Shown one piece after another: positions 45,477 to 59,600 of a DNA stretch of 64,000 bases (within the stretch, counting starts at the first letter, position 1; the number at the start of each line of letters is the position of its first letter). The position numbers were made by a program, and so were the translations under genes. The stretch spans positions 124,001-188,000 of the IMG/VR virus record IMGVR_UViG_3300024308_000302. One strand, given 5' to 3'. Under the pieces are notes generated by a model. The model was not told the DNA's origin. It saw nothing but the letters and a program-made list of their open reading frames with translations, and did no database searches.

Positions 45477-45485
45477 ATGTTTGTC

Positions 45486-45614: not shown

Positions 45615-45770
45615 TTCGTATTTCCTTGTATGTTTCGTTTTGATGGCTCCATTATAGAGAAATTGGTACTGCATGTAAAGCATTATTTTCGTTTTTTCTA
45701 AATTGTTTTTGATTGATTTTAAACAATAAATTAAAATAAACCAGAGGGCAGATTTAATAGAACCTGAAAA

Positions 45771-46106: not shown

Positions 46107-46247
46107 GTGAAAATACCTATATATCGTTGATTTAATAAAGTAATTTTGGTAAAAATTAGAATTTGAAGCAAGAAGTTTGAATTATACCATATTGAATAAT
46201 CGTAAGCAAAAAAAATCTGGCTAAAACCAGATCTTTAAATTATTGAT

Positions 46248-46610
46248 TTAGGTTACTGCAATTTGATTTGTATATTTTCGTTGATTTTTATAAATGTCAT
46301 TCGCCTTTTCTTCACTGATTTGAACAAGATTGATAAGGGGAGCGTTTTCAAAGACATTATAAAACCAATCAGAAACAGCCTGAGTATAAGTATATCCGGG
46401 GACACAAGAAACTCTTTTAAATTTCAGAATAGGACGGCCACGACCATCAACAACTACGCTCTTAGAAATATACAAAGGAGAGTCTTTTCCTGCATCAGCA
46501 TCAACAAAGAAAGTTGAACCAATGTAAGGATTATTGTTATAACAGATGAACACATAACAAAAACAACCCAAAAGGAATAGAGCACACACAATAAAAATCA
46601 ATGTTGGCAT
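46248..46610 (-). CDS. Membrane-anchored hypothetical protein
   Basis: N-terminal TM; GAGGA SD. Confidence 0.7.
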   Translation of the reverse strand: MPTLIFIVCALFLLGCFCYVFICYNNNPYIGSTFFVDADAGKDSPLYISKSVVVDGRGRPILKFKRVSCVPGYTYTQAVSDWFYNVFENAPLINLVQISEEKANDIYKNQRKYTNQIAVT

Positions 46611-46905
46611 AATTTAATCCTCTTATTGTTCAATTTTTTAAATGTTATAAAGCTAAACTGATATTCAAGAGTATGGTAAAATTTACAAAAGTTGAATGAA
46701 CAGTTGCGAGAGGTTTATTTTATCAAAAAATGACACAAAATACAACAATAAGTGATGAATTCACACAAAAATTAAATAACAAAAAACCCCTTCTAAGAGG
46801 GGCTGTTCAATCTCTATTAATTAGTTTTCTATAAGTAACTTACTGAATGGATAGCTTACATTTTGAACGTTCATTAATTATCAGTAGTTTTATTGTAGTT
46901 GAATT

Positions 46906-46989
46906 TGGTGCCCGAAGCCAGACTCGAACTGGCACGGCTCTCGCCGGAAGATTTTAAGTCTTCTGTGTCTACCATTCCACCATTCGGGC
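46906..46989 (-). tRNA. tRNA-Leu(UAA) copy 3
   Basis: GCCCGAA...CT-TAA-AA...TTCGGGCACCA. Confidence 0.95.
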
Positions 46990-47021
46990 TTAAAAATGGT
47001 CTACCGTAGTAGACCTGTTAA

Positions 47022-47156
47022 TCAGTCTGCGTCTTTATGACGGTTTCGGCGTTTATTGCGTCGGTTACGATCTTCTCGATGAGCACGAGCTTTTTCTGGA
47101 TCTTTTTGTTTACGGCCACTGAAACGTTCTGTTGCATCACCATAAGAACCTTGCAT
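47022..47156 (-). CDS. 44-aa basic peptide (not in ORF track)
   Basis: MQGSYGDATERFSGRKQKDPEKARAHREDRNRRNKRRNRHKDAD; GAGGA SD. Confidence 0.75.
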   Translation of the reverse strand: MQGSYGDATERFSGRKQKDPEKARAHREDRNRRNKRRNRHKDAD

Positions 47157-47247
47157 TTTTTACATCCTCTTTTTTGGGTAATCTTTGTAACTTTGTAGCT
47201 TTATATTATCAACGTTTTTTTAAATGTGCAAGCTTTTTTTTGCAATT

Positions 47248-47466
47248 TTAAGTCAATTTTTGTGCAGCATCGTAGGCAAGTGCAAATGTACGGAAAGCGT
47301 CAATCTCAACAGCTTCACCACCATGAGTTGGAATCTCAAAAAGATGGAAAAGACCACCATCACGGATTTCAATATACCACCCATCATCAATATATGGGGC
47401 ATTTTGAACAATCATATGGCCAGTTGACGGATCAAAAAAAGAAAAAAGCGGAATATTAGTAGACAT
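47248..47466 (-). CDS. Hypothetical protein
   Basis: GAGGTG SD; LFEIPTHGG. Confidence 0.75.
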   Translation of the reverse strand: MSTNIPLFSFFDPSTGHMIVQNAPYIDDGWYIEIRDGGLFHLFEIPTHGGEAVEIDAFRTFALAYDAAQKLT

Positions 47467-47554
47467 AAATCACCTCATAATTTAAACCTATAATAGCATA
47501 AAACACTATAAATTCAAGAAAAAAATTTTGGTGAGGTCTTTATTGTGTTTGAAA

Positions 47555-48550
47555 TTAAATAGAATACATACTGAGCAACATTAAAGTGTCTTCTGACAGT
47601 GGCAATGCAGGTGAAATATCAATCTCTTTTAACATTCTAATCGTTTGCATTGATGGGTATCTTGATAAACAATAATTATATCTGGACATGTAAACTTTTT
47701 TAAATTTATTTACATAGTCAATATAATCATTATTGAGGTACTGTTTATATTGAATAGATAATGTACCAGACTCATATGTTATAATCATGAATCTATCATA
47801 AGATTTAACAGAAGAGTCTGACTTATCACTATCAGATGGATGATGTTCAACAATAAGCTCATACTTTCGTCCATTTTTATACAACAAACATGGATTGTAG
47901 TCATTTTTAAGAATTCTAACTTTTTTTGTATCAATGTATTTTTCAAAACTAATAGCTATATCACGCACAGCTTCCATTGATGTAAAATCACTGAATCGGC
48001 CAACTTCAAAAATCAACTTATCAGCAATATAAAAGTGAGCTTTATTTAAGATGGAACCTGTTTTTGAAAGTAGACAAAAAGAGATACGCTCAACACCAGT
48101 AACAACTGTTTTTTGTAATATTTTAATTTCTGGATAATAATTTTCATCTAAAGTAAGTAAGTTAGGGACTTTAGATAAACTTTGAGAATCGTTGCCTGTC
48201 AATAAGTCCATTAAATCTGGATGATTGTTAAACACGCCTACATAACGATTTTTTAAATAAGGAAAAACAGAAGAATCCATTGTTAAAAGTATGTTTTTAT
48301 TAATACATTCCATAATGAAATCTTGATGATTTAAAGATGATTCATACTTCATACAATAATCCATAGAAACTTGACTAACAAAATCTTTTATACTTAAAAA
48401 TAAGAAGCCATCTAAAAATGTAGCGTTAGCTAATAGATTATTATTTAATTTCAATGAATAGGAATTATTAGTAAATTCTTTAATAGAAGATACAACTGAA
48501 TCTACGTCCTCTTTTTTCTTGAAATAATCCTTTAACTTATTTAAAAACAT
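47555..48550 (-). CDS. Hypothetical protein, C-terminal motif family; paralog of 57692..58852
   Basis: Ends PS...PLSEDTLMLLSMYSI. Confidence 0.75.
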   Translation of the reverse strand: MFLNKLKDYFKKKEDVDSVVSSIKEFTNNSYSLKLNNNLLANATFLDGFLFLSIKDFVSQVSMDYCMKYESSLNHQDFIMECINKNILLTMDSSVFPYLKNRYVGVFNNHPDLMDLLTGNDSQSLSKVPNLLTLDENYYPEIKILQKTVVTGVERISFCLLSKTGSILNKAHFYIADKLIFEVGRFSDFTSMEAVRDIAISFEKYIDTKKVRILKNDYNPCLLYKNGRKYELIVEHHPSDSDKSDSSVKSYDRFMIITYESGTLSIQYKQYLNNDYIDYVNKFKKVYMSRYNYCLSRYPSMQTIRMLKEIDISPALPLSEDTLMLLSMYSI

Positions 48551-48661
48551 AATAATATTAAATGTGCATGATTATAGTATGCAACATAATAATACTTTTT
48601 CAAATAAAAAAGCCAACATTGAATGCTGGCTTATTAATGGAATTATTTAATTAGAAAAGTG

Positions 48662-48913
48662 TTAAATTCTTGATATAAGTAGACAAATTATGAAAGTAAT
48701 AATATAAGCAGAAAGCCAAATAACTTTAAAAGGTCTGGTTTTAATTTTGGTTGCAAAAGGTGTAACACGTTCAACCATTTGAACAACAATTGGATATGAG
48801 GCCAATAACTCTTGTTCACATTTAATAAGAATGTGATTATTTGGACTATGATAACGTTCAAGCAATATAGTAGGTATCAGACAACAACTTACAAACAAAA
48901 AAATAAATAGCAT
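48662..48913 (-). CDS. Small membrane protein
   Basis: Two hydrophobic segments. Confidence 0.6.
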   Translation of the reverse strand: MLFIFLFVSCCLIPTILLERYHSPNNHILIKCEQELLASYPIVVQMVERVTPFATKIKTRPFKVIWLSAYIITFIICLLISRI

Positions 48914-48922
48914 TACACATAC

Positions 48923-49159
48923 CTAATAAATAATAGTAACAAGATGTGAAACACCATTTTTAAGAATAACATCTCTTTTTTCAACTTTTGTTTGAACATT
49001 TTTACCATTATTCCCACAATCAACAGAAACTACAGTATTGAGTGCAGATGCAATGCAAGCATCAGGTAGAATAACCAAGCGAACTTCAATATAGCCAGTC
49101 ATTGTGCCAGCATGCACACTGAATGGAATCAACAACAAAGGCAATATCTTTTTCCACAT
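48923..49159 (-). CDS. Small secreted protein
   Basis: Signal peptide ending VHA; two Cys. Confidence 0.65.
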   Translation of the reverse strand: MWKKILPLLLIPFSVHAGTMTGYIEVRLVILPDACIASALNTVVSVDCGNNGKNVQTKVEKRDVILKNGVSHLVTIIY

Positions 49160-49185
49160 GATTATTTTACCTGTACTGGATGATT

Positions 49186-49524
49186 TTAATTAGGTTTAAT
49201 CAATGAAAGAGAGAATTTGAAAGCTTCATACATGCTTACATATTCTTCACGCACTTTAGTTTCATTGAATGAGCAAACCATAGAGCGGAAATAACGATAA
49301 GCTGGATAAGCTTTAATTCCATCTTGTTTGAGTTCTGCTTTGATAGCTTCTGCAAAGCAAGCAGAAATGAAAATGCCATGACTAACAGAACCTCGACCAG
49401 TAATATCAAAACATTTAAAATCAATATCATCAAAGCTAGCTCGCAATGATTCAATTTGTGCATCACTCAGATCATGAGTAGTTTGCTTAGTGTTATCAAT
49501 AGCATTGTGCATATGCATCTCCAT
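49186..49524 (-). CDS. Hypothetical protein
   Basis: 112-aa ORF. Confidence 0.65.
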   Translation of the reverse strand: MEMHMHNAIDNTKQTTHDLSDAQIESLRASFDDIDFKCFDITGRGSVSHGIFISACFAEAIKAELKQDGIKAYPAYRYFRSMVCSFNETKVREEYVSMYEAFKFSLSLIKPN

Positions 49525-50165
49525 TAGATAAGAATCATTTTTAAGGCTTCAATTTTATCATTTAACATATGTTTTTGCAATGCAACTTTGAAATCTTTTT
49601 CCTGAAATATTTCAAAAAAGGCATCTGGTCTTTTATAAGCTATGTAGCTGAGTCTTATTGTTTCAAGAATTTCATTATAATCAAGAGTATCGTTCACAAT
49701 TTCTACGATACTATTATTTTCAATGTAAAAATCCTTAAAGTATGACAAATAGTTAGACTTTGTATAATATTCAAACCTATTTTCAAGGTGGTATAAATCA
49801 ACTCCAGCAGAGTAAATATGATTTTCATTAAGAATAAAACAACTCCAAGATTCTCTATCAACAGTAAATTGAGATGAAATTTTCATGTTATAATTAGTAT
49901 TAAATGGCAATTTAAGTAAGTAACTAGAAGGTAAGCGAATTTCAAACCCCAGAAATCCACTTTTACCATAAGCCACGTTCAATGTGGCAATTACTGATTG
50001 TTTAAAAGAAAATTCAAATTGTTCATAATCAGCACAATAAACATGAACTACACCGTTATTAATAAGTTGAAACTTATCATTAATAATTTTGAAAAGCTTA
50101 ACAATGGTTTCCTTCTCAACTTTTGGATACCATTGATCTTGATTAACTAATAAGAAATCAATCAT
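49524..50165 (-). CDS. Hypothetical protein, C-terminal motif family
   Basis: Ends IEALKMILI. Confidence 0.72.
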   Translation of the reverse strand: MIDFLLVNQDQWYPKVEKETIVKLFKIINDKFQLINNGVVHVYCADYEQFEFSFKQSVIATLNVAYGKSGFLGFEIRLPSSYLLKLPFNTNYNMKISSQFTVDRESWSCFILNENHIYSAGVDLYHLENRFEYYTKSNYLSYFKDFYIENNSIVEIVNDTLDYNEILETIRLSYIAYKRPDAFFEIFQEKDFKVALQKHMLNDKIEALKMILI

Positions 50166-50166
50166 G

Positions 50167-50682
50167 TTAGATTTCCAGATTTAAATGCATACGCATAAGG
50201 TGTCTAACTCTTGAGATCTCTTCAATAATCCAATCATATTGAGGAACAGTAATGATTTTTGCATTTTGCTGATCTTTACCAAAATAATAATAATGAACAA
50301 GAGGCAATGTTGAATAGGTCAATTCTTTAAGGATATCTTTATTTTGACGAAGTTTACAACGAATGGCTTCACAAACGTCTTCTTTGAAATAATAAGAAAA
50401 AATACCAGAACTGTCATCGTCTTTTACAGGAAGAAGTTTACGACCTAATTCTTTTGCAGCAAGTCCATAGGTCAATTTGATTTCTTCTGAATCAATGCCA
50501 TGTTCCAAAAGAAGACGGAAATACCAAAAGGCTTCTACTGATGCAAATTTACCATATTTGGGATGAACAAAATAACTACGATTAAAGTTAGTTAGCTTTT
50601 TGCCAAGAGCAGTTTTACCACGACTAAACACATTGATGTGATCGACGCCATCATTCAAGGGCGAAAGGATTATGTTTGTCAT
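50167..50682 (-). CDS. NADAR-like protein
   Basis: LTNF...FASVEAFWY...AAKELGR...IRCKLRQNKDILKEL pattern. Confidence 0.6.
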   Translation of the reverse strand: MTNIILSPLNDGVDHINVFSRGKTALGKKLTNFNRSYFVHPKYGKFASVEAFWYFRLLLEHGIDSEEIKLTYGLAAKELGRKLLPVKDDDSSGIFSYYFKEDVCEAIRCKLRQNKDILKELTYSTLPLVHYYYFGKDQQNAKIITVPQYDWIIEEISRVRHLMRMHLNLEI

Positions 50683-50745
50683 AATTAGCTCCTTGTCAAA
50701 TCAGAATTATAACATAATATCAATCGAAAATAAAGAAAAACCCGC

Positions 50746-51318
50746 TTAGAGCGGGTTATCATTCACTTCAACTACACAAGGTTTAATGATGCCTGAATCA
50801 AGCAAAATATCAAGTTCAGTTTTACCAGTGCCTGCCCAAGCAGCAGTTCGAAGATTTTTCGGAGCATCAGGGGTCATGTGAACCACAACAAGACCAGAGC
50901 TTTCAACGCGACCATGATAGCTGGAACATGCTTTCATACGGAGTTCATACAGTTCATCTACCGAAACTTTACAAGCGTAAAGGTGAGTATTTTGAGTAAG
51001 GCGTTTTCCAGTCATATGATGAGAACAAATTAGGGTAAGGTCTTCTGCATTTGGTGTATGCCCAATTTCTTCACCAGACTCACGAAGTGCAGCAGTAATG
51101 AGGTCTTCACCTTCATCTACCTGACCACCCACAAAGCCCATACTACCATCCCAACGAACCATAACACCAAGCAGAGAAACTTTAGCAAACCATGCACCTT
51201 CACCCCATTTGCGGCAGTCTGGGTTAGTTTGATACAGGTGGGTTGGGTCAGCATAAAATGCAATGAACACAGAGTTTTTGTCAGCCATAGTGCCATTAGG
51301 AACGCGGGATACTTGCAT
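50746..51318 (-). CDS. Nudix hydrolase, NUDT16-like
   Basis: MVRWDGSMGFVGGQVD...ALRESGEEIG Nudix box; THLYA. Confidence 0.85.
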   Translation of the reverse strand: MQVSRVPNGTMADKNSVFIAFYADPTHLYQTNPDCRKWGEGAWFAKVSLLGVMVRWDGSMGFVGGQVDEGEDLITAALRESGEEIGHTPNAEDLTLICSHHMTGKRLTQNTHLYACKVSVDELYELRMKACSSYHGRVESSGLVVVHMTPDAPKNLRTAAWAGTGKTELDILLDSGIIKPCVVEVNDNPL

Positions 51319-51372
51319 GGTAAATCCTCAATGATTAATGTAGATCTATTATAATATATCCTGAATAATCAA

Positions 51373-52164
51373 TCAACACCTATTTGGGGATTTTGATTCA
51401 TGCAGGCCATATTTGACAACAAAATCACAAAAGTCAGCATAAGTGATTGAGCCACCTTTTGAGAATAGCTGATTCAAATCTTCTGAAAACGAACGATGGA
51501 GAACAGTCAGATCAACTGGATAGATTTTATTGATGTTTATATTTTGCATATAGCGAGTAGTTTTTTCTAAATTATGCTCAAATTCAAGCTCAATACTTTC
51601 TGCAATCTTAATAATATCATTTTTTCCAATGTGGTGAATACCACTAAACATAGCACCAGATTCAAAGATCCAATGACGTTCAATCAACTTATCTCGATAT
51701 TTCTTACAAGACAACTCAATAACATCTTTCATATCAGACAAGGCATCAAAAATATTTTTTATATCACCATCTTTTACAGCACTATTAAAACCATCAACTT
51801 CATAAGAATCATTAGTATTAAAATCAATGCAATCCATAACGTCAGATTCATGGTCGCATCCATAGACAAGATTATGTAGGAGAGCCACTGTAAATTGATG
51901 ATGCAGTTGAGATTTTAATTCCATTTCAGCTAGCCTCATCTTATAGGTGTTAGATGTTTCTACCAAAACATCATAATTGATAGTCTCAACAAATTTTGGC
52001 ATAAAAGTTTTTACAAAATTATCAAAATCTGGGCCAATAAGATATAAAGGATCATGTGTATTATAGCTATCTACCCAAAAATAAGTAGCACGAGCAGCGA
52101 CTACACCAGACATAAGGTATAGCTGAGGATTGGTCAAAGAACAAATATCAGTAACTCTTGTCAT
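51373..52164 (-). CDS. Hypothetical protein
   Basis: 263-aa ORF. Confidence 0.75.
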   Translation of the reverse strand: MTRVTDICSLTNPQLYLMSGVVAARATYFWVDSYNTHDPLYLIGPDFDNFVKTFMPKFVETINYDVLVETSNTYKMRLAEMELKSQLHHQFTVALLHNLVYGCDHESDVMDCIDFNTNDSYEVDGFNSAVKDGDIKNIFDALSDMKDVIELSCKKYRDKLIERHWIFESGAMFSGIHHIGKNDIIKIAESIELEFEHNLEKTTRYMQNININKIYPVDLTVLHRSFSEDLNQLFSKGGSITYADFCDFVVKYGLHESKSPNRC

Positions 52165-52292
52165 AGATAACCTTTATTAAATTAAAATGGTTGAATTTTC
52201 AATATTCAACCAATTTGGTTGTTAAAAAAAACAATAAAATTTTACTTTTGTCAAGTTTAAAATAGAATTTTTATTCAAATAATTCAATTATT

Positions 52293-52502
52293 TTAAAGAT
52301 CTGTGAATCCACCATAGCCATTTTGCGGATAATGGTCATTTTCAAGCTTGCTCAACGCTGCCTTACGTTTTTGTTCGATAAATGCGGTCGATGAAAAAAT
52401 GGACTTGTTTTTTAATTCATTATCGTATGTTTGATTGATTTGCTGTTTTTCACTACGATAATGATCTTGTGCAGAATAACCAGAATCAGAATTGCTCATC
52501 AT
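52293..52502 (-). CDS. Small hypothetical protein
   Basis: AGGAG SD. Confidence 0.6.
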   Translation of the reverse strand: MMSNSDSGYSAQDHYRSEKQQINQTYDNELKNKSIFSSTAFIEQKRKAALSKLENDHYPQNGYGGFTDL

Positions 52503-52600
52503 ATAATAAATACTCCTTAAACAATAAAAATAATATCAAATAAATAAAAAAAAGGCAATAAAAAAGCCATCATTAGATGGCCTTTTAAACAACCTACATA

Positions 52601-52915
52601 TTAACTTTCGAAAAGCTCACCAATTTTGAGAGCCATCATCATATCTCCTTCGATACGGAGCTTACCACTCATGAAAGCCTGCATACCGTCAAGTTCACCA
52701 GTAGACATAGCATACAGGGTGTCTGAATCAGCTACAAAGGTAGTAGTCGATTCCTTTGGAGCAGTTTCAACAACAGTACAGGCAGAATTTTTAATTTGCA
52801 AGTAGAAGTCTTTGTCATCAGGAACATTGAAATGATAAATCAGATCAAGACCAGAAGCCGCTTCTGCGTTGAATTTAGCAATGAAATTGGTTTGTGCTTG
52901 TGCTGTTTTAGACAT
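52601..52915 (-). CDS. SCP2 sterol/lipid carrier domain protein
   Basis: KFN...GLDL...GELDGMQAFMSGKLRIEGDMMMALKI. Confidence 0.9.
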   Translation of the reverse strand: MSKTAQAQTNFIAKFNAEAASGLDLIYHFNVPDDKDFYLQIKNSACTVVETAPKESTTTFVADSDTLYAMSTGELDGMQAFMSGKLRIEGDMMMALKIGELFES

Positions 52916-52936
52916 ATTGTTTCTCCACGATTAATT

Positions 52937-53023
52937 TGGTGCCCAAAGCCAGACTCGAACTGGCACTCCGATTAAGGAAAGGGATTTTAAGTCCCCCGCG
53001 TCTACCGATTTCACCATTTGGGC
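52937..53023 (-). tRNA. tRNA-Leu(UAA) copy 4
   Basis: GCCCAAA...CT-TAA-AA...TTTGGGCACCA. Confidence 0.95.
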
Positions 53024-53065
53024 GTGCGACTATTCTAATAAAGAATATTAAAACAGTCAATACTT

Positions 53066-53305
53066 TTATGATTTTTCTTGAGATTTTTTGAGTTGATGTT
53101 CTGCATCAAGCTCACGAATAGCAATATCCATTCTCATTCGATCAAGAACAGTGCTCTTTGCAATATCATTAGCATCAGCAATTTGATAAGGATTCAAAAA
53201 AGTTTCAAGATAAGCTAATGCTGTATTCCGGTCAGCCTCATTCATGAAACTCAACATCAATTGGCCACGGTTGAGGTCCAATTCAGTCTTGTCAATTTCA
53301 AGCAT
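53066..53305 (-). CDS. Hypothetical protein
   Basis: GAGG SD. Confidence 0.7.
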   Translation of the reverse strand: MLEIDKTELDLNRGQLMLSFMNEADRNTALAYLETFLNPYQIADANDIAKSTVLDRMRMDIAIRELDAEHQLKKSQEKS

Positions 53306-53439
53306 AATAACCTCTACACCTTATCCGTTGATTGGATGTGTAGTATAACAATATTCTGAAACATGGTCAATCATTAATGATGCGGATTATAGCAAAATTT
53401 TCTCAAAGTTAGCAAGTTAATTCTGTGATTTTGGAGCAG

Positions 53440-54051
53440 TCATTTGTATCGATAGGAAGTCACACGCTGACCTTGGACAAAATGATAAATATCAGTAACA
53501 ACAGAATCTACATATTCAACATAATGTATGCCAAGTGTATTAATGCTTTTGTTATTATATTGTCTGGTATGGATTTGTTTTATCTTGTCATCAATATAAA
53601 TATAAGATGCATACCAATAACCTTTATTTTTATCAACTTTTAAAGATTCCATAATTCGACCATTAACACAAATAACTTCTGATATTGAATAAACCCCATA
53701 ATTTAAATCTAAATCTACTTCAAAAATAGAATCATTCTCTTTAAAATAATAAATAGTATTTGTTTGAACTTGCTGCTTATCAGTAATTGTAATTTGAGCA
53801 ATGAAATCATCAATCATACGATGTTCATACAATGAAGTATATGTAAGAGGCTTAACTCTCAGATATTTAGAATGTTTCACATCCACTAACTCAAGCCCTA
53901 ATGGCTCAAGAGAATAGGTTAAATCTTTAGACCAGAATATTCTGTTGAAAGTAGTTGGTGCTTCATTAATAACTTTTTTAATAAATTCTGGATCTTTTAT
54001 TTTTAAAGAGAAATCATCTATTTTATGTTTAATATCATTCACTGTTAGCAT
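53440..54051 (-). CDS. Hypothetical protein
   Basis: 203-aa ORF. Confidence 0.7.
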   Translation of the reverse strand: MLTVNDIKHKIDDFSLKIKDPEFIKKVINEAPTTFNRIFWSKDLTYSLEPLGLELVDVKHSKYLRVKPLTYTSLYEHRMIDDFIAQITITDKQQVQTNTIYYFKENDSIFEVDLDLNYGVYSISEVICVNGRIMESLKVDKNKGYWYASYIYIDDKIKQIHTRQYNNKSINTLGIHYVEYVDSVVTDIYHFVQGQRVTSYRYK

Positions 54052-54204
54052 AATTATAATGTAATCATTTTGATATTAGTTTAAGTGAAAAGAATGAAAA
54101 AATCAAATATCAAAACAATACATTACAAAAAATATCATATAACAAATTGTATTATTTTAAAATAGATATATAATGATAAATATATATAATAATTTGGGTG
54201 CGAC

Positions 54205-54972
54205 ATGAATAAATCAAAATTAAGTTTCCCAGCAATAGTTGTTTGTATGTTAAGTTACAATGCTTCAAATGCAGCATATGTAGCAAAAGTTCCATTAGAG
54301 ATTCCACAAGGTGGATCGCTACCATATAATAGTATAATAATTGGTTCAGGTAATAAAGAATTAGATTTCGATCCACCTGATCCATTACCCACAGATGATG
54401 GTGTTGTATGCGAATACAATCTAACCAATTCTCCTAATATATCTGTTTATACAGATGGAATAATGAAGAGTCCTGATAATGAATGGATATCCTATAAGGA
54501 GATTTATTATCAAGGACAAAAAGTAATCAATGCTTTTAAAGGCAAAGAAATATTTAGACAAAATGATGAAATGTATAATATAGGTTACTATGAAGTATGT
54601 ATACAAGGTTCTCCATTATATAGTAATCAAAATAATGAAGTAGAAAATCAAGAATGGGATCAAGATGATTGTAGATATAATAACGAAACGGGAACTCAAT
54701 ATTCTTGGACTACCACCACTACAAGTGATGGTAGATATGCATTCCTGAATGCAAGTCTAGGAAGCTTTGGATATGTTACAGCAAATAGTAGTAATATAAT
54801 ATTCCCAGTAGGTACTATAACTGTACCAGAGGGAAAAATATTACCAGAAGGAAAGCAAAGAATAATAATAGGGAACACTGCATTTGATAGAGGTAACTAT
54901 TATGGATCTGTAAATATAGGTAATAATGTTTTCCAAAGCAAATATGAAGTATGTAAAAAAACAGGAAAATAA
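54205..54972 (+). CDS. Secreted protein, K(I/V)PLE family
   Basis: Signal peptide then AYVAKVPLEIPQGGSLPYNSIIIG; two C..YN..YEVC modules. Confidence 0.8.
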   Translation: MNKSKLSFPAIVVCMLSYNASNAAYVAKVPLEIPQGGSLPYNSIIIGSGNKELDFDPPDPLPTDDGVVCEYNLTNSPNISVYTDGIMKSPDNEWISYKEIYYQGQKVINAFKGKEIFRQNDEMYNIGYYEVCIQGSPLYSNQNNEVENQEWDQDDCRYNNETGTQYSWTTTTTSDGRYAFLNASLGSFGYVTANSSNIIFPVGTITVPEGKILPEGKQRIIIGNTAFDRGNYYGSVNIGNNVFQSKYEVCKKTGK

Positions 54973-55004
54973 AAAAAGCCATCAAAAGATGGCTTTCTTA
55001 TTAA

Positions 55005-55358
55005 TCATGTTTCGTTATCTTTTAAAATTTGACATAGCCAGCTTGATGCATCATTAAGATGAGATTCACCAGCGTCAATTTCATCCAGAAGCTTTCGGAA
55101 AGTATCAATATCGTTACAGCGTTCTTTTCGTGTATTTGTAAGCAGTTCAATAGCATCCGCTTTACCAGTTAGATCATCTGGTGATGAACTAAGCGTTGTC
55201 AGAACTCGATCAATACTAATTAAGTCATCACGAACTTTTTTGTAAAGCTTATCAATTGTTTGTCGAATTTCATATAATTTGAAATTAGATTTACCAACAA
55301 GATCATTTGATTCTTTAATAGCTTTTAGTACAAGTTTTTGCATGAATGATAACTCCAA
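55005..55358 (-). CDS. Hypothetical helical protein
   Basis: 117-aa ORF. Confidence 0.65.
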   Translation of the reverse strand: MELSFMQKLVLKAIKESNDLVGKSNFKLYEIRQTIDKLYKKVRDDLISIDRVLTTLSSSPDDLTGKADAIELLTNTRKERCNDIDTFRKLLDEIDAGESHLNDASSWLCQILKDNET

Positions 55359-55574
55359 TTAAATAATAGTCTCAAATCTATCAGAAATGTGATAACCATT
55401 AAGTTTAAGCCAATGTTTAATTTTCCCAGAGTCGTGCTCATGAAAAGTTTGTAATTGCTTGGTTCTCTCAGCATCCCAAAGAATAAAAAGACCTGAGCCG
55501 TATGAAGCAAGATATTCCAGACAAGCTGGTGTTGTGATTGGTTTTGAAAAAATAGATAGGAATTTTTTAAACAT
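55359..55574 (-). CDS. Hypothetical protein
   Basis: Start revised to MFKKF (AGGAG SD); the track extension overlaps tRNA-Leu(CAA). Confidence 0.7.
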   Translation of the reverse strand: MFKKFLSIFSKPITTPACLEYLASYGSGLFILWDAERTKQLQTFHEHDSGKIKHWLKLNGYHISDRFETII

Positions 55575-55609
55575 ATTTATTGAAACTCCTTTAGGTATTA
55601 TTTGAAAAT

Positions 55610-55693
55610 TGGTGCCCAAGGTCGGACTCGAACCGACACGTCTTTCGACAGAGGATTTTGAATCCACCGCGTCTACCATTCCACCACTCGGGC
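55610..55693 (-). tRNA. tRNA-Leu(CAA)
   Basis: GCCCGAG...TT-CAA-AA...CTTGGGCACCA. Confidence 0.93.
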
Positions 55694-55839
55694 TAAAAAT
55701 TCTACCCGCTGCGTAAGCTAAAAGCGTCCTCACACTGAAACACAAGTGTTAATGGCGATTTTGCTATTAACTTGCAACACACTAGTCAATTCGGTGTCCA
55801 ATGAGATTGGATTCAGCAAATTGAACGGCGTAGAAAAAC

Positions 55840-55914
55840 TGGTGCTAAGGACGGGATTCGAACCCGTGACCATCGGATTTAGAGGCCGTTGCTCTGCCGC
55901 TGAGCTACCAAAGC
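55840..55914 (-). tRNA. Amber suppressor-type tRNA(CUA), copy 1
   Basis: Loop CT-CTA-AA; acceptor GCTTTGG/CCTTAGC, ACCA. Confidence 0.85.
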
Positions 55915-55980
55915 ATGTTATTACTATCACTTGTTTTGTTGAGCCATTATACAACAAGACCCAACAAGAAACAAGTATTT

Positions 55981-56328
55981 TTATCGTTTAATTGCGACTT
56001 CCGTATCCCAATCCACTTCAACTCGCTGATTTTCATCGAAATCATAAAGACCTTCATGTCCAGATATTGATTCAATGTAAAGAGTTCGTTCACCACCTCG
56101 CCAACGAGCACTCCAGCTATCAGTATCAAAAATATCAATCAGAATATCTTTTAATGTAGGATACTTTTGTTTAAAAGACTTCCAACTCTTGTCAATCAGG
56201 ATTTCATCAACATGACCACCATTATTACCGAGTTCGGTGGCCCTCATGATACATTGATATTTTTTTGTGCCACGAATTCTGGTTTCTTCAAAGGTTATAT
56301 CTAAACCAATTTCTTCATTCAGAGCCAT
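55981..56328 (-). CDS. Hypothetical protein, YPxLK paralog family
   Basis: EETRIRGT...SWKSFKQKYPTLKDIL...GHEGLYDF. Confidence 0.8.
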   Translation of the reverse strand: MALNEEIGLDITFEETRIRGTKKYQCIMRATELGNNGGHVDEILIDKSWKSFKQKYPTLKDILIDIFDTDSWSARWRGGERTLYIESISGHEGLYDFDENQRVEVDWDTEVAIKR

Positions 56329-56351
56329 AGCAAAATCTCCATGTATAAATT

Positions 56352-56428
56352 TGGTGGGACTTGTAGGACTTGAACCTACGACCTGCCGATTATGAGTCGG
56401 ACGCTCTAACCAACTGAGCTAAAGTCCC
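56352..56428 (-). tRNA. tRNA(CAU), probably Ile2 (lysidine, reads AUA)
   Basis: GGGACTT acceptor; CGA-CTCATAA-TCG and TTCAAG resemble ileX. Confidence 0.85.
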
Positions 56429-56434
56429 GTAATT

Positions 56435-56845
56435 TTACATCAAACTATCAGCATAAAGCTTTTTGTGTTGATCTACAACACAACCAAAAGAATCTTCATA
56501 CAGATAAACAGATGATTTAATGGTTTCAATTGGTCTTGCCAACTCTGAATACATCAAAGTGTCAACACGATATCCACCACGCCCATTTTTACCTTTCCAA
56601 AGCTCCCAAACAAGTACAGCAAGCGTACCAATTTTGAAAACTTTTTCAGGTTTAAAGCTGCTCACATAATCTACACAACCAAAACCAGCAGCTATATGAA
56701 CTTTAATACCTTTTGGATTAACCTTTACTACAGTGCCAGAACATAACGAATAATCAATTAAGACTTTAACATCATCACCAATAGACAATGTTTTAGTTTC
56801 AATAATTTGTTTGATATGTTCTTCATATAGCATAATGTTATCCAT
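56435..56845 (-). CDS. Hypothetical protein
   Basis: WELWKGKNGRGGYR motif. Confidence 0.75.
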   Translation of the reverse strand: MDNIMLYEEHIKQIIETKTLSIGDDVKVLIDYSLCSGTVVKVNPKGIKVHIAAGFGCVDYVSSFKPEKVFKIGTLAVLVWELWKGKNGRGGYRVDTLMYSELARPIETIKSSVYLYEDSFGCVVDQHKKLYADSLM

Positions 56846-56848
56846 AAT

Positions 56849-56923
56849 TGGTGTTAAGGGTGGGATTCGAACCCACGACCATCGGCTTTAGAGGCCGCTG
56901 CTCTACCGCTGAGCTACCAAAAC
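56849..56923 (-). tRNA. Amber suppressor-type tRNA(CUA), copy 2
   Basis: Loop CT-CTA-AA; acceptor GTTTTGG/CCTTAAC, ACCA. Confidence 0.88.
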
Positions 56924-56968
56924 ATTTATTCTATAAATAAGATACAATTAAAGCATATTTATATAAAC

Positions 56969-57053
56969 TGGTGCCCGGTGCCAGACTCGAACTGGCACGA
57001 CTTTCGCCGGAAGATTTTAAGTCTTCTGTGTCTACCGATTTCACCAACCGGGC
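56969..57053 (-). tRNA. tRNA-Leu(UAA) copy 5
   Basis: GCCCGGT/ACCGGGC; CT-TAA-AA. Confidence 0.95.
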
Positions 57054-57331
57054 GTAAAAAATGAATTAAAAATTTGCGTGTGTCGAACTTAACTTTACAA
57101 CACAATCTGATTTACCCAGAGCCTTAGCTAGCCCTGTCTTCACAAGAAGAAAACACACCTAACTCTACAAGAAGTCAGATTTGGTAACTGAATACCTGTG
57201 AAACCATATTGTTGTAAAATAATATCCTTTTTTTCAACCCCTTCGTTTGGGCTGTCAACGTAACATCCGCTGAATAACACCTATATACCTGCAACTGGAT
57301 ATAGTTACAACTTTTTAACTCATTGCAAAAC

Positions 57332-57417
57332 TGGTGCCCGAAGCCGGACTCGAACCGGCACTCCGATTAAGGAAAGGGATTTTAAGTCCCCCGCGTCTAC
57401 CATTTCACCACTCGGGC
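57332..57417 (-). tRNA. tRNA-Leu(UAA) copy 6
   Basis: GCCCGAG...CT-TAA-AA...TTCGGGCACCA. Confidence 0.95.
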
Positions 57418-57586
57418 TTAAATAAAACATCAATATGGTCTACTCTATTTATGTTCGCACCGAGTAGTTTTCCATACTTACAAGCTATATTGGCAACCGA
57501 AGCTGTTATTCCAAAACAAGCCACTTGTAAGAAGTGCTGTTTCATTGCTGCAAGATTTTGTATCTCCGTTTCGTCTTGATGGGCCT

Positions 57587-57615
57587 ATTATAAAGAAGGT
57601 GACATACAAGGTCAA
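57587..57615 (-). promoter_or_regulatory. Sigma70 promoter for Leu/amber tRNA operon
   Basis: TTGACC-17-TATAAT; leader CATCAAGACG shared with the promoter at 2836. Confidence 0.8.
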
Positions 57616-57691
57616 GTGTTTTTTTTGTTTATTTTTCAAATATTTATCGAAAAAATCTTTGACAAAATCTTAAAGAATATGTTAAGGATAA

Positions 57692-58852
57692 TCAAACAAC
57701 AAACATGTCCACGACCATTAAATCATCTTGATTCAAAGGTGTATCTGTTGAAAGTCCCAAATTATCTAATTTTTCTAGGACAGAAAAAGATGGATGAAAT
57801 GACTTGAAATAGTCAAGTTTATTCACAATGACATTATTAATTGACATTTCATGCTCTTTAACCATATCCAAAGTAAATTTTGAAGACGATTTTTTTAATT
57901 TTCCGTAAAAATAAGTATAAGTAACTAATCTATCATTCTTATATCTAATCAAAGGTGTTTCTTTATTCAAAAGACTTTGCCGGAAATTTGAATAGCTGGG
58001 GCTTTCATCAAGAGCACTGGTGTATTCATTAAATTTTGTAATATAGCTTACAGAAAAAACACGATTTGTTTTTCTAAATAAGCAATATTGATTATCTAAC
58101 GTTTTTAAAACCCGAATATTCTCAAGATTTAAATGCTTCAAATAAAACTCTTTTTTACCTTTTAATTGATCGTTAATACCTTCACGAGTATCCACATCAG
58201 CTAAAAATGAAAAAGGACTTGAAACTATCGTTGATGTAAAGAATGATTCAAAATCACTCAGATGAAAAATATTATTATCAACATAATAATAAACAACAGG
58301 ATCAGTTTTTACTTGATCATTATCATATATAGAATAAAAACTATATTTGAAAATATTTTTTAAAATTTTTTTTCTTTTGAAATAAATAATCTGATATTTT
58401 TTATGTTCCCGATAAATATGTGAATGATATTTATCAAAATCATATCTTTTATGAAATTTAGTTGTTTTTTTCACCAATTGATACATATGTTTAAGATGAT
58501 TATCAAAAGGAGTTTGATGAAAAGACTTAAAAAAACCATTATGGAAATTAACAAAGTCAATTAAATTTCTTTTTGGGATTTTAAATAGAATATTATTTTT
58601 AATGGTATCAACAACAAAATCATCTAAAGATAGTTGACTATCATCCATAGGAGTTGCATAGTTTATTTTTAGAAGTTTTCCTAGCTCATCATGTTGGATT
58701 GTGACATACATAATACGATCATCAAAATCAATAAATGCTTTCAAACCATTATTTGCATTGACATCGTAACGACAGTCACCCAGTTGAGTCACAAAAAAAT
58801 CTGGCTCACTGTATAAACAAATATTTAAAAAGTTAATAAGTTTATGGAGCAT
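57692..58852 (-). CDS. Hypothetical protein, C-terminal motif family
   Basis: Ends PS...PLNQDDLMVVDMFVV. Confidence 0.75.
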   Translation of the reverse strand: MLHKLINFLNICLYSEPDFFVTQLGDCRYDVNANNGLKAFIDFDDRIMYVTIQHDELGKLLKINYATPMDDSQLSLDDFVVDTIKNNILFKIPKRNLIDFVNFHNGFFKSFHQTPFDNHLKHMYQLVKKTTKFHKRYDFDKYHSHIYREHKKYQIIYFKRKKILKNIFKYSFYSIYDNDQVKTDPVVYYYVDNNIFHLSDFESFFTSTIVSSPFSFLADVDTREGINDQLKGKKEFYLKHLNLENIRVLKTLDNQYCLFRKTNRVFSVSYITKFNEYTSALDESPSYSNFRQSLLNKETPLIRYKNDRLVTYTYFYGKLKKSSSKFTLDMVKEHEMSINNVIVNKLDYFKSFHPSFSVLEKLDNLGLSTDTPLNQDDLMVVDMFVV

Positions 58853-58919
58853 AATAGATCCCAAAAATTAAATTTATAGAACCTTCATGATATCATAATT
58901 TTTGTAGGCTTACTAGATA

Positions 58920-59198
58920 TTAATCGCCACGAAAAACAAAATTGCTTGGTGGTAAAGATTTAGAAGGGCCTTCTTTATCAGCCAATGGTTGAATGGTGTA
59001 TAAAACGGTATCCCAGCTTTGATACTGAGTGTTAAACATATAGAGTTTTTTTGTTCTCATGTTCTGTTTGTAATTTTGATTATTGTGGTTATCAATGAAA
59101 TAAACAAAACCATCATAGATATAAGTACATTGAAGCGTTGATTTCGCTTTGTTTTCAACGGTTAAAAGATAAAGAGAGCCTTCATTATATGTTGTCAT
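58920..59198 (-). CDS. Hypothetical protein
   Basis: AAGGA SD. Confidence 0.7.
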   Translation of the reverse strand: MTTYNEGSLYLLTVENKAKSTLQCTYIYDGFVYFIDNHNNQNYKQNMRTKKLYMFNTQYQSWDTVLYTIQPLADKEGPSKSLPPSNFVFRGD

Positions 59199-59328
59199 TC
59201 CTTATACTCCATTAGAAAGGTTACAGGCAATTTGAAGATCAATCGCCTACATTTACATTATATAAAGATTCATATTTTTTACAAGGCCGTTTCAACAATA
59301 AATAAAATAAAAATTGTTTTTAGAAAAA

Positions 59329-59436
59329 GATAAACCTCTTCAAACTTACTTACACACATTAACATTAATAGAGCTGCTACCTTCCGGTCCTGACTCGGTT
59401 TTCAATGCAATGTTATAAGGGCCGAAGAGGTCTATC
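59329..59436 (-). ncRNA. ffs: Bacterial small SRP RNA (4.5S)-like gene
   Basis: 108-nt rod with 15-bp terminal helix and domain IV GAG-TCAGGACC-GGAA-GGTAGCAG-CTC. Confidence 0.9.
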
Positions 59437-59523
59437 ATTACAACAACAATAATAACAGAGATTCTAAAATATGCAAGCAAAAAAATAAAAAAAGCCACCA
59501 CAAGGTGACTTTATTTTTTAAGT

Positions 59524-59600
59524 TGGCCCAGCCAGCAGGAATCGAACCTGCAACCGTCCGCTTAGAAGGCGGATGCTCTATCCAATTGAGCTATGGCTGG
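59524..59600 (-). tRNA. tRNA-Arg(UCU)
   Basis: CCAGCCA...CT-TCT-AA...TGGCTGGGCCA. Confidence 0.95.

What the first reader, a model, noticed from the sequence alone, without database searches (positions are those of the whole stretch)
59329..59436. Element-encoded 4.5S SRP RNA
Seen: the - strand folds into a 108-nt rod. The terminal helix is GAUAGACCUCUUCGG/UUGAAGAGGUUUAUC, inner helices are CUUAUA/UGUAAG and ACAUU/AAUGU, and the cap is GAG-UCAGGACC-GGAA-GGUAGCAG-CUC. Known: this cap is the Ffh-binding domain IV of bacterial SRP RNA (E. coli GG-UCAGGUCC-GGAA-GGAAGCAG-CC), here with a compensatory U-A to A-U swap. The flanking helices are AU-rich like the rest of this genome, so it is not a recently captured host fragment. 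A distal bulged G is kept, but the GUGCCG distal motif recalled from E. coli is altered. Inference: the phage either supplies its own SRP RNA to keep membrane targeting going after host RNA decay (the window has many membrane and secreted proteins), or uses it as an Ffh decoy.
Basis: partly seen in the sequence, partly recalled or inferred. Interest (0 to 1): 0.9.

Follow-up and report, generated by a model that had tools for sequence, protein, structure and literature searches.

The report
SRP RNA on a megabase phage-like replicon
The window really does encode a canonical bacterial 4.5S-type signal recognition particle RNA, but its carrier is not a 290 kb phage: it is a closed 1.54 Mb circular replicon full of unknown genes and tRNAs, and whether that is a giant phage-like element (which would be remarkable) or an odd undescribed bacterium (which would be ordinary) is still open.

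Summary
Observation confirmed. Window 59329-59436 (-) is a full-length match to Rfam RF00169, Bacteria_small_SRP (58.7 bits, gathering 40, E 2.5e-10). It folds as a 108-nt rod (z -5.6) with an intact Ffh-binding core, GGAA tetraloop and distal GUGUG loop.

Interpretation partly supported. The IMG/VR 'viral contig' (290 kb) is a slice of a 1,539,155 bp replicon, recovered twice at identical length but rotated, so closed and circular.

I sampled 207 kb contiguously plus three remote 21 kb pieces:
- About 20% of proteins have Pfam hits; mean ORF length is 231 aa; strand bias is strong.
- The 207 kb holds 25 tRNAs, including 9 Leu-UAA and 2 amber suppressors.
- Recognisable cargo: homing endonucleases, NAD-salvage genes, RNA ligases.
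- None of the sampled DNA has rRNA, ribosomal-protein operons or virion genes.
- Shine-Dalgarno sites and intrinsic terminators show bacterial expression.
- The replicon is absent from GTDB, and there is no compositional step at the IMG/VR boundary.

No phage above 1 Mb is known, so its nature stays unresolved.

Independently, a ~500 kb lineage collinear with a deposited Caudoviricetes genome (Rctr197k) also carries an SRP RNA inside its tRNA array. I found no paper reporting this. Element-encoded SRP RNA therefore looks real and undescribed; for this window I rate it about 0.6.

The parts
59329..59436 (-). Small (4.5S-type) SRP RNA gene, a 108-nt rod
   Evidence: RF00169 58.7 bits (GA 40), model 1-97/97, at 59334-59429. 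MFE rod -38.3 kcal/mol, z -5.6. Identical in three independent assemblies.
59371..59396 (-). Domain IV core GAGUCAGGACCGGAAGGUAGCAGCUC (Ffh M-domain binding loops plus the GGAA tetraloop at 59382-59385)
   Evidence: All positions invariant across 7 aligned SRP RNAs, including E. coli ffs, are kept. Coordinates.
59412..59415 (-). 5' side (UAAC) of the distal internal loop
   Evidence: Aligns with E. coli CAAC. A at RNA position 24 is invariant.
59352..59357 (-). 3' side (GUGUGU) of the distal internal loop. RNA position 82 aligns with E. coli G83.
   Evidence: Alignment A5. G82 is invariant in all 7 sequences. The role of G83 in GTPase activation is from the literature as I recall it.
59324..59328 (-). 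U-tract directly after the rod (a possible intrinsic termination or 3' end signal)
   Evidence: The sequence read shows ...GGUUUAUC UUUUU C. Inference only.
59449..59476 (-). Weak promoter-like hexamers TTGCAT-16-TATTAT (alternative -10 TAGAAT at 59461-59466) between the upstream terminator and the RNA
   Evidence: Read from the sequence. Below the threshold of the consensus scan, so tentative.
59491..59512 (-). Intrinsic terminator that closes the upstream tRNA-Arg unit and so separates it from the SRP RNA unit
   Evidence: 9-bp stem, 4 GC pairs, T-run.
59524..59600 (-). tRNA-Arg(UCU), the nearest neighbour on the same strand
   Evidence: ARAGORN. Rfam tRNA 71.6 bits.
1975..59600 (-). tRNA-rich arm in which the SRP RNA sits: 20 tRNA genes, all on the - strand, including 7 Leu(UAA), 2 Arg(UCU) and 2 with CUA (amber suppressor) anticodons

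Best explanation
Window 59329-59436 (-) is a genuine and probably functional 4.5S-type SRP RNA gene. It forms its own small transcription unit. An intrinsic terminator ends the upstream tRNA-Arg unit, weak AT-rich promoter-like hexamers follow, and the rod is followed by a U-tract.

The RNA keeps every element needed for a full targeting cycle:
- the two domain IV loops that bind the Ffh M domain;
- the GGAA tetraloop that docks FtsY;
- the distal GUGUG loop that activates GTP hydrolysis.

It would therefore assemble with an Ffh protein into an active SRP rather than act as a dead-end decoy.

Its carrier is not a 290 kb phage. It is a closed, compositionally uniform, 1.54 Mb circular replicon expressed by bacterial machinery. 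Everywhere it was sampled it consists of short unknown ORFs, redundant tRNAs, homing endonucleases and cargo typical of jumbo phages. I consider it most likely a giant phage-like or other extrachromosomal element. On that reading it supplies its own SRP RNA, alongside its tRNAs, to work with the host's Ffh.

Shown here: the RNA's identity, its anatomy, and the nature of the DNA sampled. Inferred: expression, Ffh binding, and the non-cellular status of the replicon.
For: RNA:
- RF00169, 58.7 bits, full length; rod with z -5.6.
- Core and distal loop conserved against E. coli ffs; 12 of 18 consensus pairs show double-sided compensatory changes.
- Upstream terminator.

Carrier:
- Window is 100% identical to IMG/VR UViG_3300024308_000302, which lies inside JGI contig Ga0247725_1000001 of 1,539,155 bp.
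- A second record has the same length but is rotated and reversed, so the genome is closed and circular. An 811 kb ENA contig also carries it.
- Shine-Dalgarno core upstream of 39% of ORFs against 4.8% background.
- 207 kb contiguous (record 373-580 kb), with 188 kb merged exactly. In that 188 kb: 219 ORFs, mean 231 aa, 177 on one strand. Few Pfam families: 18 among 84 ORFs, 21 among 74.
- PHROG hits are HNH/homing endonucleases, RNA ligase, NUDIX, MazG, NAMPT, ATPase and DNA polymerase exonuclease.
- 25 tRNAs in the 207 kb with heavy redundancy, and 2 CUA suppressors.
- No rRNA, RNase P RNA, tmRNA or second ffs in any stretch scanned.
- A remote sample at 1.25 Mb on the same replicon, and two samples on a related 1.86 Mb contig, look the same.
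- Not among GTDB r232 species; best M17 peptidase match is 41-46% identical, in mixed phyla.
- No GC or GC3 step at the IMG/VR boundary.

Precedent:
- L002/L005, a ~500 kb lineage, has a full-length SRP RNA (57.7 bits) in a tRNA array.
- That lineage recurs at 0.2-1 Mb and never above 1 Mb.
- It shares 5 collinear genes at 45-61% aa identity with Caudoviricetes 'Virus Rctr197k', which has head-morphogenesis and terminase-like genes.
Against: - No capsid, portal, terminase or tail gene was found in about 270 kb sampled. The only such hit is a weak tape-measure PHROG match (3.6e-07).
- 1.54 Mb is more than twice the largest described phage, and no duplodnavirus above 1 Mb is known (PMC7162821; PMC13598248).
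- The sampled DNA includes cell-like genes. On this replicon: bacterial-type pyrH (9e-91), pepA, HMG-CoA reductase, UbiA, a PEP-utilising enzyme, a Na+/H+ exchanger and polymorphic-toxin/SUKH domains. The samples pooled in A4 (same replicon at 1.25 Mb plus the 1.86 Mb relative) add an MCP chemoreceptor, whose source locus was not resolved.
- Only about 15% of the replicon was seen, and the remote samples were reached through TnpB copies, which favour dispensable regions.
- No ffh or ftsY was seen, so the protein partner is unknown.
- No consensus-grade promoter was found, and there are no expression data.
- All assemblies are one near-clonal population, so there is no within-lineage covariation.
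Confidence: 0.55

Rival explanations
1. Ordinary chromosomal ffs. The 1.54 Mb circle is the chromosome of an undescribed, AT-rich, reduced-genome bacterium (for example a symbiont or parasite of a deep lineage), and this is its single housekeeping SRP RNA gene. IMG/VR merely mis-called an ORFan-rich 290 kb region as provirus.
For: - The size and closed circular form are typical of a small bacterial genome.
- Bacterial SD sites and terminators.
- Only one SRP RNA in the DNA seen.
- Bacterial-type pyrH, pepA, HMG-CoA reductase, UbiA and a Na+/H+ exchanger on this replicon, and an MCP chemoreceptor among the distant samples.
- Uniform composition across the 'provirus' boundary.
- No virion genes seen.
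- No phage above 1 Mb is known.
Against: - 207 kb contiguous, plus remote samples, contain no ribosomal-protein, rRNA, RNA polymerase, aminoacyl-tRNA synthetase, replication or cell-envelope operon. A reduced genome should have roughly one core gene every few kb.
- Only about 20% of proteins have Pfam hits, and mean ORF length is 231 aa.
- 9 copies of tRNA-Leu(UAA) and 2 amber-suppressor tRNAs are not what reduced cellular genomes carry.
- Many homing endonucleases.
- No relative closer than 46% identity in 185,579 GTDB species.
- A true chromosomal ffs neighbourhood looks quite different.
Confidence: 0.3
2. Ffh decoy. The element makes an SRP RNA look-alike that sequesters host Ffh (or FtsY) and shuts down host membrane-protein targeting.
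For: The Ffh-binding core is perfectly conserved. No cognate ffh was seen near it. Takeover of host processes is a common phage strategy (general knowledge).
Against: A decoy only needs domain IV. Here the GGAA tetraloop, the full-length rod and the distal GUGUG loop with the G83 equivalent are all retained, and the stems are kept by compensatory changes. That is the signature of selection for the complete catalytic cycle. The isolated 44-nt domain IV hairpin in L010 shows what a minimal binder would look like, and this RNA is not that.
Confidence: 0.07
3. Captured host fragment or att-site remnant. Some temperate phages integrate into ffs and carry part of it, so the sequence could be a non-functional piece left by integration or transduction.
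For: Phage phiEf11 uses a 27-nt core inside ffs as attB (PMC12540744). Several IMG/VR hits are SRP RNAs at contig ends, or duplicated on one 18 kb contig (L003 and L013), consistent with att duplications. A 9 kb 'Escherichia phage' record contains a 100% identical E. coli ffs.
Against: The gene is full length (model 1-97/97), single copy, and internal to a huge replicon. It is AT-adapted (41% GC) like its surroundings and lies among same-strand tRNAs. No integrase or recombinase family appears among the Pfam or PHROG hits reported for its neighbourhood.
Confidence: 0.03

Closest known systems
E. coli 4.5S RNA (ffs) and the Rfam family RF00169 Bacteria_small_SRP
   Same: Same architecture and length class (108 against 114 nt). 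Identical domain IV loops, GGAA tetraloop, and distal AAC/GUGUG loop with the G83 equivalent. Full-length covariance-model match.
   Different: 41% GC with AU-rich stems. The longest exact run shared with E. coli ffs is 8 nt, so blastn finds nothing. C86 and C87 are replaced by U and A, with compensating changes. The genomic context is ORFans and tRNAs instead of housekeeping genes.
Translation-related RNAs of huge phages (tRNA arrays, tmRNA; Al-Shayeb et al. 2020, PMC7162821)
   Same: A host-type stable RNA of the translation and targeting apparatus, embedded in a same-strand tRNA-rich region of a very large, ORFan-rich, phage-like genome with homing endonucleases and suppressor tRNAs.
   Different: That paper does not mention SRP RNA (0 occurrences), and my literature searches found no report of it in phages. 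The carrier here is 1.54 Mb, beyond any described phage.
SRP RNA of the ~500 kb IMG/VR lineage (UViG_3300017971_000185 / Ga0310068_1000001; L002, L005, L109)
   Same: Full-length small SRP RNA (57.7 bits), on the same strand and inside a tRNA array of a huge element. It has the same A-U variant next to the tetraloop.
   Different: 58% GC. No shared genes with the window's replicon. That lineage is demonstrably related to a tailed phage (Rctr197k), whereas the window's replicon has no such anchor.
ffs as a phage attachment site (phiEf11; PMC12540744)
   Same: A link between phages and the ffs locus. It explains most small IMG/VR contigs that carry SRP RNA sequence.
   Different: There the phage carries only a 27-nt core and the functional gene is the host's. 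Here there is a complete, single, internal gene with no integrase nearby.

Membership tests
Rfam RF00169 Bacteria_small_SRP (4.5S RNA) | Covariance-model score at or above the curated gathering threshold over the full model | tested here: met
   58.7 bits against 40; model 1-97/97; E 2.5e-10.
Rfam RF00169 Bacteria_small_SRP (4.5S RNA) | Domain IV: conserved symmetric and asymmetric internal loops capped by a GNRA (GGAA) tetraloop | tested here: met
   GUCAGG-A-CC-GGAA-GG-U-AGCAGC at 59371-59396. All columns invariant in 7 SRP RNAs are kept.
Rfam RF00169 Bacteria_small_SRP (4.5S RNA) | Single extended hairpin of about 100-115 nt with paired 5' and 3' ends and no Alu domain | tested here: met
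   108-nt rod, z -5.6. The best clan match is the small model, not the large (RF01854) model.
Rfam RF00169 Bacteria_small_SRP (4.5S RNA) | Distal internal loop (E. coli CAAC/GUGUGC, with G83) that activates the Ffh-FtsY GTPase | tested here: met
   UAAC/GUGUGU. The G83 equivalent is invariant. Its functional role is from the literature as I recall it and was not tested.
Rfam RF00169 Bacteria_small_SRP (4.5S RNA) | Expressed as a stable RNA that binds Ffh | not testable with these tools
   Needs RNA-seq or Northern data and binding assays.
Tailed-phage (Caudoviricetes) genome as carrier | Virion and packaging hallmark genes (HK97-fold capsid, portal, large terminase, tail) on the same replicon | tested here: inconclusive
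   None among about 280 ORFs scanned against PHROGs and Pfam. Only about 15% of the replicon was accessible.
Tailed-phage (Caudoviricetes) genome as carrier | Genome size within the range known for phages | tested here: not met
   1,539,155 bp, against a maximum of 735 kb (PMC7162821). No duplodnavirus above 1 Mb is known (PMC13598248).
Integrated prophage in a host chromosome | Discrete boundaries: a compositional step, integrase, and att repeats or a tRNA at the edge | tested here: not met
   No GC or GC3 step. The boundary genes are ORFans followed by HMG-CoA reductase and UbiA, and ORFans resume beyond them. No integrase among the Pfam hits listed for the boundary genes.
Bacterial chromosome as carrier | rRNA operons, ribosomal-protein and other core housekeeping operons | tested here: inconclusive
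   None in 207 kb contiguous plus the remote sample of this replicon. The remaining ~85% was not seen.
Bacterial chromosome as carrier | The genome or close relatives are present among catalogued bacterial species | tested here: not met
   GTDB r232 scan with the M17 peptidase: no self hit; best 41-46% identity, in mixed phyla.
ffs att-site remnant (phiEf11 type) | Partial ffs copy adjacent to an integrase, duplicated at the two ends of an insert | tested here: not met
   Full-length single copy. No integrase family among the reported hits.

The most novel reading that the evidence does not exclude
The 1.54 Mb circle, and its 1.86 Mb relative Ga0308158_10000001, are bacterial viruses or virus-like extrachromosomal elements with megabase genomes, larger than any known phage. 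Like the unrelated ~500 kb Rctr197k-like huge phages, they encode their own SRP RNA next to their tRNAs. That would extend viral takeover of the host translation apparatus to co-translational membrane targeting.
Probability: 0.4. Interest if true: 0.9.

Novelty: new member of a known kind. Interest (0 to 1): 0.66.

Why it matters
The RNA itself is a textbook 4.5S SRP RNA, so the interest lies in who carries it.

If the carrier is a mobile element, SRP RNA joins tRNAs, tmRNA and translation factors among the host-type components that huge phages bring along. That would point to membrane-protein targeting as a step worth controlling or safeguarding during infection, and it can be tested directly with the well-developed E. 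coli Ffh/FtsY assays.

The independent case in a ~500 kb lineage related to a deposited tailed phage suggests this has been overlooked, because huge-phage annotation used only tRNA and tmRNA finders.

Separately, a closed 1.54 Mb replicon expressed by bacterial machinery and made almost entirely of unknown genes deserves attention whatever it turns out to be.

If the replicon is instead a cell, the ffs gene is ordinary. The lesson is then that this IMG/VR 'provirus' is a mis-call.

Tried and rejected
- Eukaryotic giant virus. I considered this because of the size, the many tRNA-Leu(UAA) genes and eukaryote-flavoured Pfams (PTH2, Nudt16-like, MYG1, SCP2, NAGPA). I rejected it on Shine-Dalgarno usage (39% against 4.8%) and canonical intrinsic terminators.
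- Alternative genetic code. The CUA-anticodon tRNAs suggested TAG recoding. Standard-code ORFs already give 81% coding density, and TAG recoding adds little. TAG is simply the rarest stop (11 of 219).
- Close phage relatives. Megablast of 5 kb around the RNA against 50,697 phage records hits only tRNAs. Five different ORFs used as queries in IMG/VR found only the source contig.
- SRP RNA in deposited phages and plasmids. blastn with the window RNA, the L002 RNA and E. coli ffs found only chance matches, host fragments and mislabelled chromosomes. blastn sensitivity for this RNA is poor, so this is not a full survey.
- Rctr197k. No SRP RNA at the syntenic site.
- Profile search with a 5-member paralogue family. 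The TnpB gene was used instead.
- Organism names from protein clusters. Only generic names came back, and the clusters are tiny.
- Literature look-up of sample and contig identifiers. Nothing found.
- Within-lineage covariation. Impossible, because the independent assemblies are 99.9-100% identical.
- One plasmid search failed on a length limit.

Full report
1. The observation

The - strand of window 59329-59436 encodes a bacterial small SRP RNA. A scan of the whole window against all 4227 Rfam models finds RF00169 (Bacteria_small_SRP) at 59334-59429. The score is 58.7 bits against a gathering score of 40, E is 2.5e-10, and the match covers model positions 1-97 of 97. A sensitive rescan of 321 nt gives the same hit and no competing family. 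The 108-nt stretch folds into one rod of -38.3 kcal/mol, against -20.8 +/- 3.1 for dinucleotide shuffles (z -5.6).

2. Anatomy of the RNA

I fetched E. coli K-12 ffs and aligned it with the window RNA and five other small SRP RNAs.
- Domain IV. The 22-nt core GUCAGG-N-CCGGAAGG-N-AGCAGC is invariant.
- Covariation. 12 of 18 consensus pairs are maintained through changes on both sides.
- Distal loop. The G aligned with E. coli G83 is one of only three invariant nucleotides outside domain IV. From the literature as I recall it, G83 is the base that activates the Ffh-FtsY GTPase. The helix beneath the loop changed by paired substitutions (CCCG/CGGG to CUUA/UAAG).
- Composition. The RNA is 41% GC and shares no exact run longer than 8 nt with E. 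coli ffs, so blastn finds nothing.
- Transcription signals. A canonical intrinsic terminator (59512-59491) closes the preceding tRNA-Arg unit. Only weak promoter-like hexamers (TTGCAT-16-TATTAT, or TAGAAT) lie between it and the RNA. A U-tract follows the rod.

Together these features indicate a complete, selected SRP RNA. They do not fit a fragment or a minimal Ffh binder.

3. What carries it

The window has about 32% GC. Nearly all genes are on the - strand, and there are 20 tRNA genes on that strand, including 7 Leu(UAA), 2 Arg(UCU) and 2 with CUA anticodons.

The window is 100% identical to IMG/VR UViG_3300024308_000302, a 290,157 bp entry. An exact protein look-up shows the same DNA inside JGI contig Ga0247725_1000001 of 1,539,155 bp. 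A second JGI record, Ga0310131_000001, has exactly the same length but a different start and the opposite orientation. That is what a closed circular genome looks like. An 811 kb ENA contig and several Logan contigs also carry it. All are 99.9-100% identical. So the IMG/VR 'virus' is a slice, roughly record 268-558 kb, of a megabase replicon.

4. Is the replicon a eukaryotic giant virus, a bacterium, a prophage or something else?

Expression system. A Shine-Dalgarno core lies at -20..-4 in 39% of ORFs against 4.8% of random positions, and there are intrinsic terminators. The DNA is therefore expressed by bacterial machinery. This excludes a eukaryotic giant virus, despite several eukaryote-flavoured domains (PTH2, Nudt16-like, MYG1, SCP2, NAGPA).

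Walking along the contig. I walked outward with exact look-ups and IMG/VR scans and merged 187,836 bp exactly. With the left flank, this gives 207 kb of contiguous sequence (record 373-580 kb).
- The merged 188 kb has 219 ORFs of at least 100 aa, mean 231 aa, 177 of them on one strand, with 81% coding density under the standard code. TAG is the rarest stop, at 11 of 219.
- Only 18 Pfam families match among 84 window ORFs.
- PHROG hits are accessory functions: HNH and homing endonucleases, NUDIX, RNA ligase, MazG, kinase, transposase.
- No capsid, portal, terminase or tail gene was found. The only such hit is a weak tape-measure PHROG match.
- No ribosomal, RNA polymerase, aminoacyl-tRNA synthetase or replication-core gene was found.
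- Isolated cell-like genes do occur: bacterial-type pyrH (9e-91), pepA, a Na+/H+ exchanger, and a small cluster of HMG-CoA reductase, UbiA, a PEP-utilising enzyme and an acyl-CoA ligase.
- That cluster sits at the IMG/VR boundary and probably caused it. ORFans resume beyond it. There is no GC or GC3 step and no integrase among the Pfam hits listed there. A discrete 290 kb prophage is therefore not supported.
- Rfam finds only tRNAs elsewhere (25 in the 207 kb): no rRNA, RNase P RNA, tmRNA or second SRP RNA.

Remote samples. An ENA contig appears to end inside a TnpB gene, which suggests a multicopy repeat. Using that gene as a query in the metagenome collection gave a second copy 727 kb away on the same replicon (L114), and two copies on a related 1,859,102 bp contig (L113, L115). 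The 74 ORFs around them match only 21 Pfam families. Those include NAPRTase, NADAR, a VWA/AAA pair, DEDDh exonuclease and one MCP chemoreceptor. PHROG hits again include HNH, RNA ligase, NAMPT and DNA polymerase exonuclease. Seven of the 74 have homologues in the window region.

Catalogue check. A GTDB r232 scan with the M17 peptidase found no self hit. The best matches are 41-46% identical and spread over unrelated phyla.

Assessment. A normal bacterial chromosome is very unlikely for the DNA seen. A whole-replicon phage-like or extrachromosomal element fits the gene content, the tRNA redundancy and the suppressor tRNAs. Against it, 1.54 Mb exceeds every described phage (735 kb in PMC7162821), and a September 2026 review says genomes above 1 Mb remain confined to Nucleocytoviricota (PMC13598248). 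No virion gene was seen. I could examine only about 15% of the replicon, and the remote samples are biased towards IS-tolerant regions. My estimate is about 0.55-0.6 for a non-cellular element and about 0.3 for an unusual cell.

5. Do phages carry SRP RNAs at all?

IMG/VR. Exact-motif scans of 2.9 million IMG/VR contigs found only 19 loci. Most are SRP RNAs at the ends of small contigs, or two copies on one 18 kb contig (L003 and L013). Those fit host flanks or att duplications, as described for phiEf11, which integrates into ffs (PMC12540744).

The ~500 kb lineage. One lineage stands out. L002 (497 kb contig) and L005 (372 kb), both 58% GC, carry a full-length small SRP RNA (57.7 bits) on the same strand inside an array of 14-16 tRNAs.
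- The lineage recurs in 23 contigs. In 17 index blocks the longest contig is 0.2-1 Mb, and none exceeds 1 Mb. It encodes EF-Tu, DNA ligase and HNH.
- Five collinear genes leading up to the tRNA/SRP array are 45-61% identical to those of 'Virus Rctr197k' (KX853510.1, Caudoviricetes). That genome has head-morphogenesis and terminase-like genes.
- Rctr197k itself lacks the SRP RNA at the syntenic site.
- The lineage shares no genes with the window's replicon.

A minimal version. A 46 kb viral contig (L010) has an isolated 44-nt domain IV hairpin between two tRNAs.

Deposited records. Deposited phage genomes and PLSDB plasmids gave only chance hits, host fragments or mislabelled chromosomes.

Literature. 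Four searches found no report of a phage-encoded SRP RNA. The main huge-phage paper annotated RNAs only with tRNAscan and ARAGORN and never mentions SRP.

6. Mechanism

Most likely (inferred) sequence of events:
1. The RNA is transcribed as its own short unit.
2. It is trimmed at the ends, as 4.5S precursors are.
3. It binds an Ffh M domain through domain IV.
4. It recruits FtsY through the GGAA tetraloop.
5. It triggers GTP hydrolysis at the distal loop.

That makes it a working SRP RNA. If the carrier is an element, Ffh would be the host's, and the RNA would be supplied together with the element's tRNAs. Why an element needs its own copy is unknown. A pure decoy is disfavoured, because features needed only for the catalytic cycle are conserved.

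7. Verdict

The RNA is a new member of a known family. The 'phage-encoded' reading is plausible but unproven for this window, and it is independently supported in another huge-phage lineage. The decisive test is a marker, rRNA and virion-gene census of the full 1.54 Mb sequence, which these tools could not reach.

Noticed in passing
whole window; JGI Ga0247725_1000001 (record = window + 392,254); L113 and L115 on Ga0308158_10000001: The window belongs to a closed 1,539,155 bp circular replicon, and a 1.86 Mb relative exists. Both are made almost entirely of short unknown ORFs with bacterial expression signals, are absent from GTDB, and show no virion or ribosomal genes in the ~15% sampled. The IMG/VR 290 kb 'provirus' is an arbitrary slice of it. 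This may be more interesting than the SRP RNA itself.
   Followed up: partly
window 55840-55914 (-) and 56849-56923 (-): Two strong tRNA genes (57.5 and 64.7 bits) have CUA anticodons, so they are amber suppressors. TAG is the rarest stop in the region (11 of 219 ORFs), but there is no sign of TAG recoding in the genes seen.
   Followed up: partly
window 44812-57417 (-) and merged position 139245-139328: Nine copies of tRNA-Leu(UAA), 84-98% identical to each other, are scattered among small ORFs, along with duplicated Arg(UCU), Pro(UGG) and Met(CAU). Two odd tRNAs also occur: a 76-nt 'Ser(AGA)' at 1975-2050, and one with an ambiguous 4-base anticodon call at 39041-39117. All inspected tRNAs encode their 3' CCA.
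   Followed up: partly
window ~59601-59694 (-) and ~39118-39213 (-): A GC-rich three-hairpin element of about 90 nt is duplicated immediately upstream of two different tRNAs (75.8% identity over 178 nt including the tRNA). Substitutions in two hairpins look compensatory. There is no Rfam match. A near-consensus promoter (TTGACA-17-TAGAAT, 60012-59984) lies upstream of the first copy. This is a candidate new structured RNA or tRNA-leader element.
   Followed up: partly
L002:8566-8658, L005:520-612, L109 ~15949: A ~500 kb, 58% GC huge-phage lineage, collinear with GenBank Caudoviricetes 'Virus Rctr197k', carries a full-length small SRP RNA inside its tRNA array. Rctr197k lacks it at the syntenic site.
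   Followed up: yes
L010:642-685: A 46 kb IMG/VR contig has an isolated 44-nt SRP domain IV hairpin (GGAA loop and both internal loops) between two tRNAs. It could be a minimal Ffh-binding RNA.
   Followed up: partly
L003 and L013 (same 18.4 kb UViG_3300024309_000099); L004, L009, L011, L014-L016, L124, L125: Two SRP RNA copies on one small viral contig, and many SRP RNAs at contig ends. This suggests that integration into ffs (as in phiEf11) is a recurrent att choice.
   Followed up: no
GenBank CAKLQF020000006.1, OR845144.1; PLSDB NZ_AP026896.1: Database mislabels. An 'Acinetobacter phage MD-2021a' contig is bacterial chromosome (bamA-lpxD-fabZ-lpxA ... ffs ... recA). A 9 kb 'Escherichia phage EC22.5-2' record contains a 100% identical E. 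coli ffs. A 4.9 Mb Aeromonas 'plasmid' is a chromosome.
   Followed up: partly
merged 85584-88924 and 106593-109972 (L026:4420-7760; L099:3046-6425): Paralogous two-gene modules (633+480 aa and 612+498 aa) with no Pfam or PHROG match. A dispersed 5-member family of ~355-375 aa, 22-36% identical, also occurs. These are lineage-specific expanded families of unknown function.
   Followed up: no
window 27724-28491 (-) and unresolved neighbouring ORFs: A SUKH/SMI1 immunity-like protein. The window's bulk Pfam scan also hit WHH and Colicin-DNase nuclease domains, which suggests a polymorphic toxin-immunity pair. The nuclease ORF was not pinpointed.
   Followed up: no
L105:1378-3075 (merged 140692-142389); L114; L120:13093-14163: TnpB/Cas12f1-like genes occur in several copies (96% identical copy 727 kb away). 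By my coordinate arithmetic an 811 kb ENA contig breaks inside one of them.
   Followed up: partly
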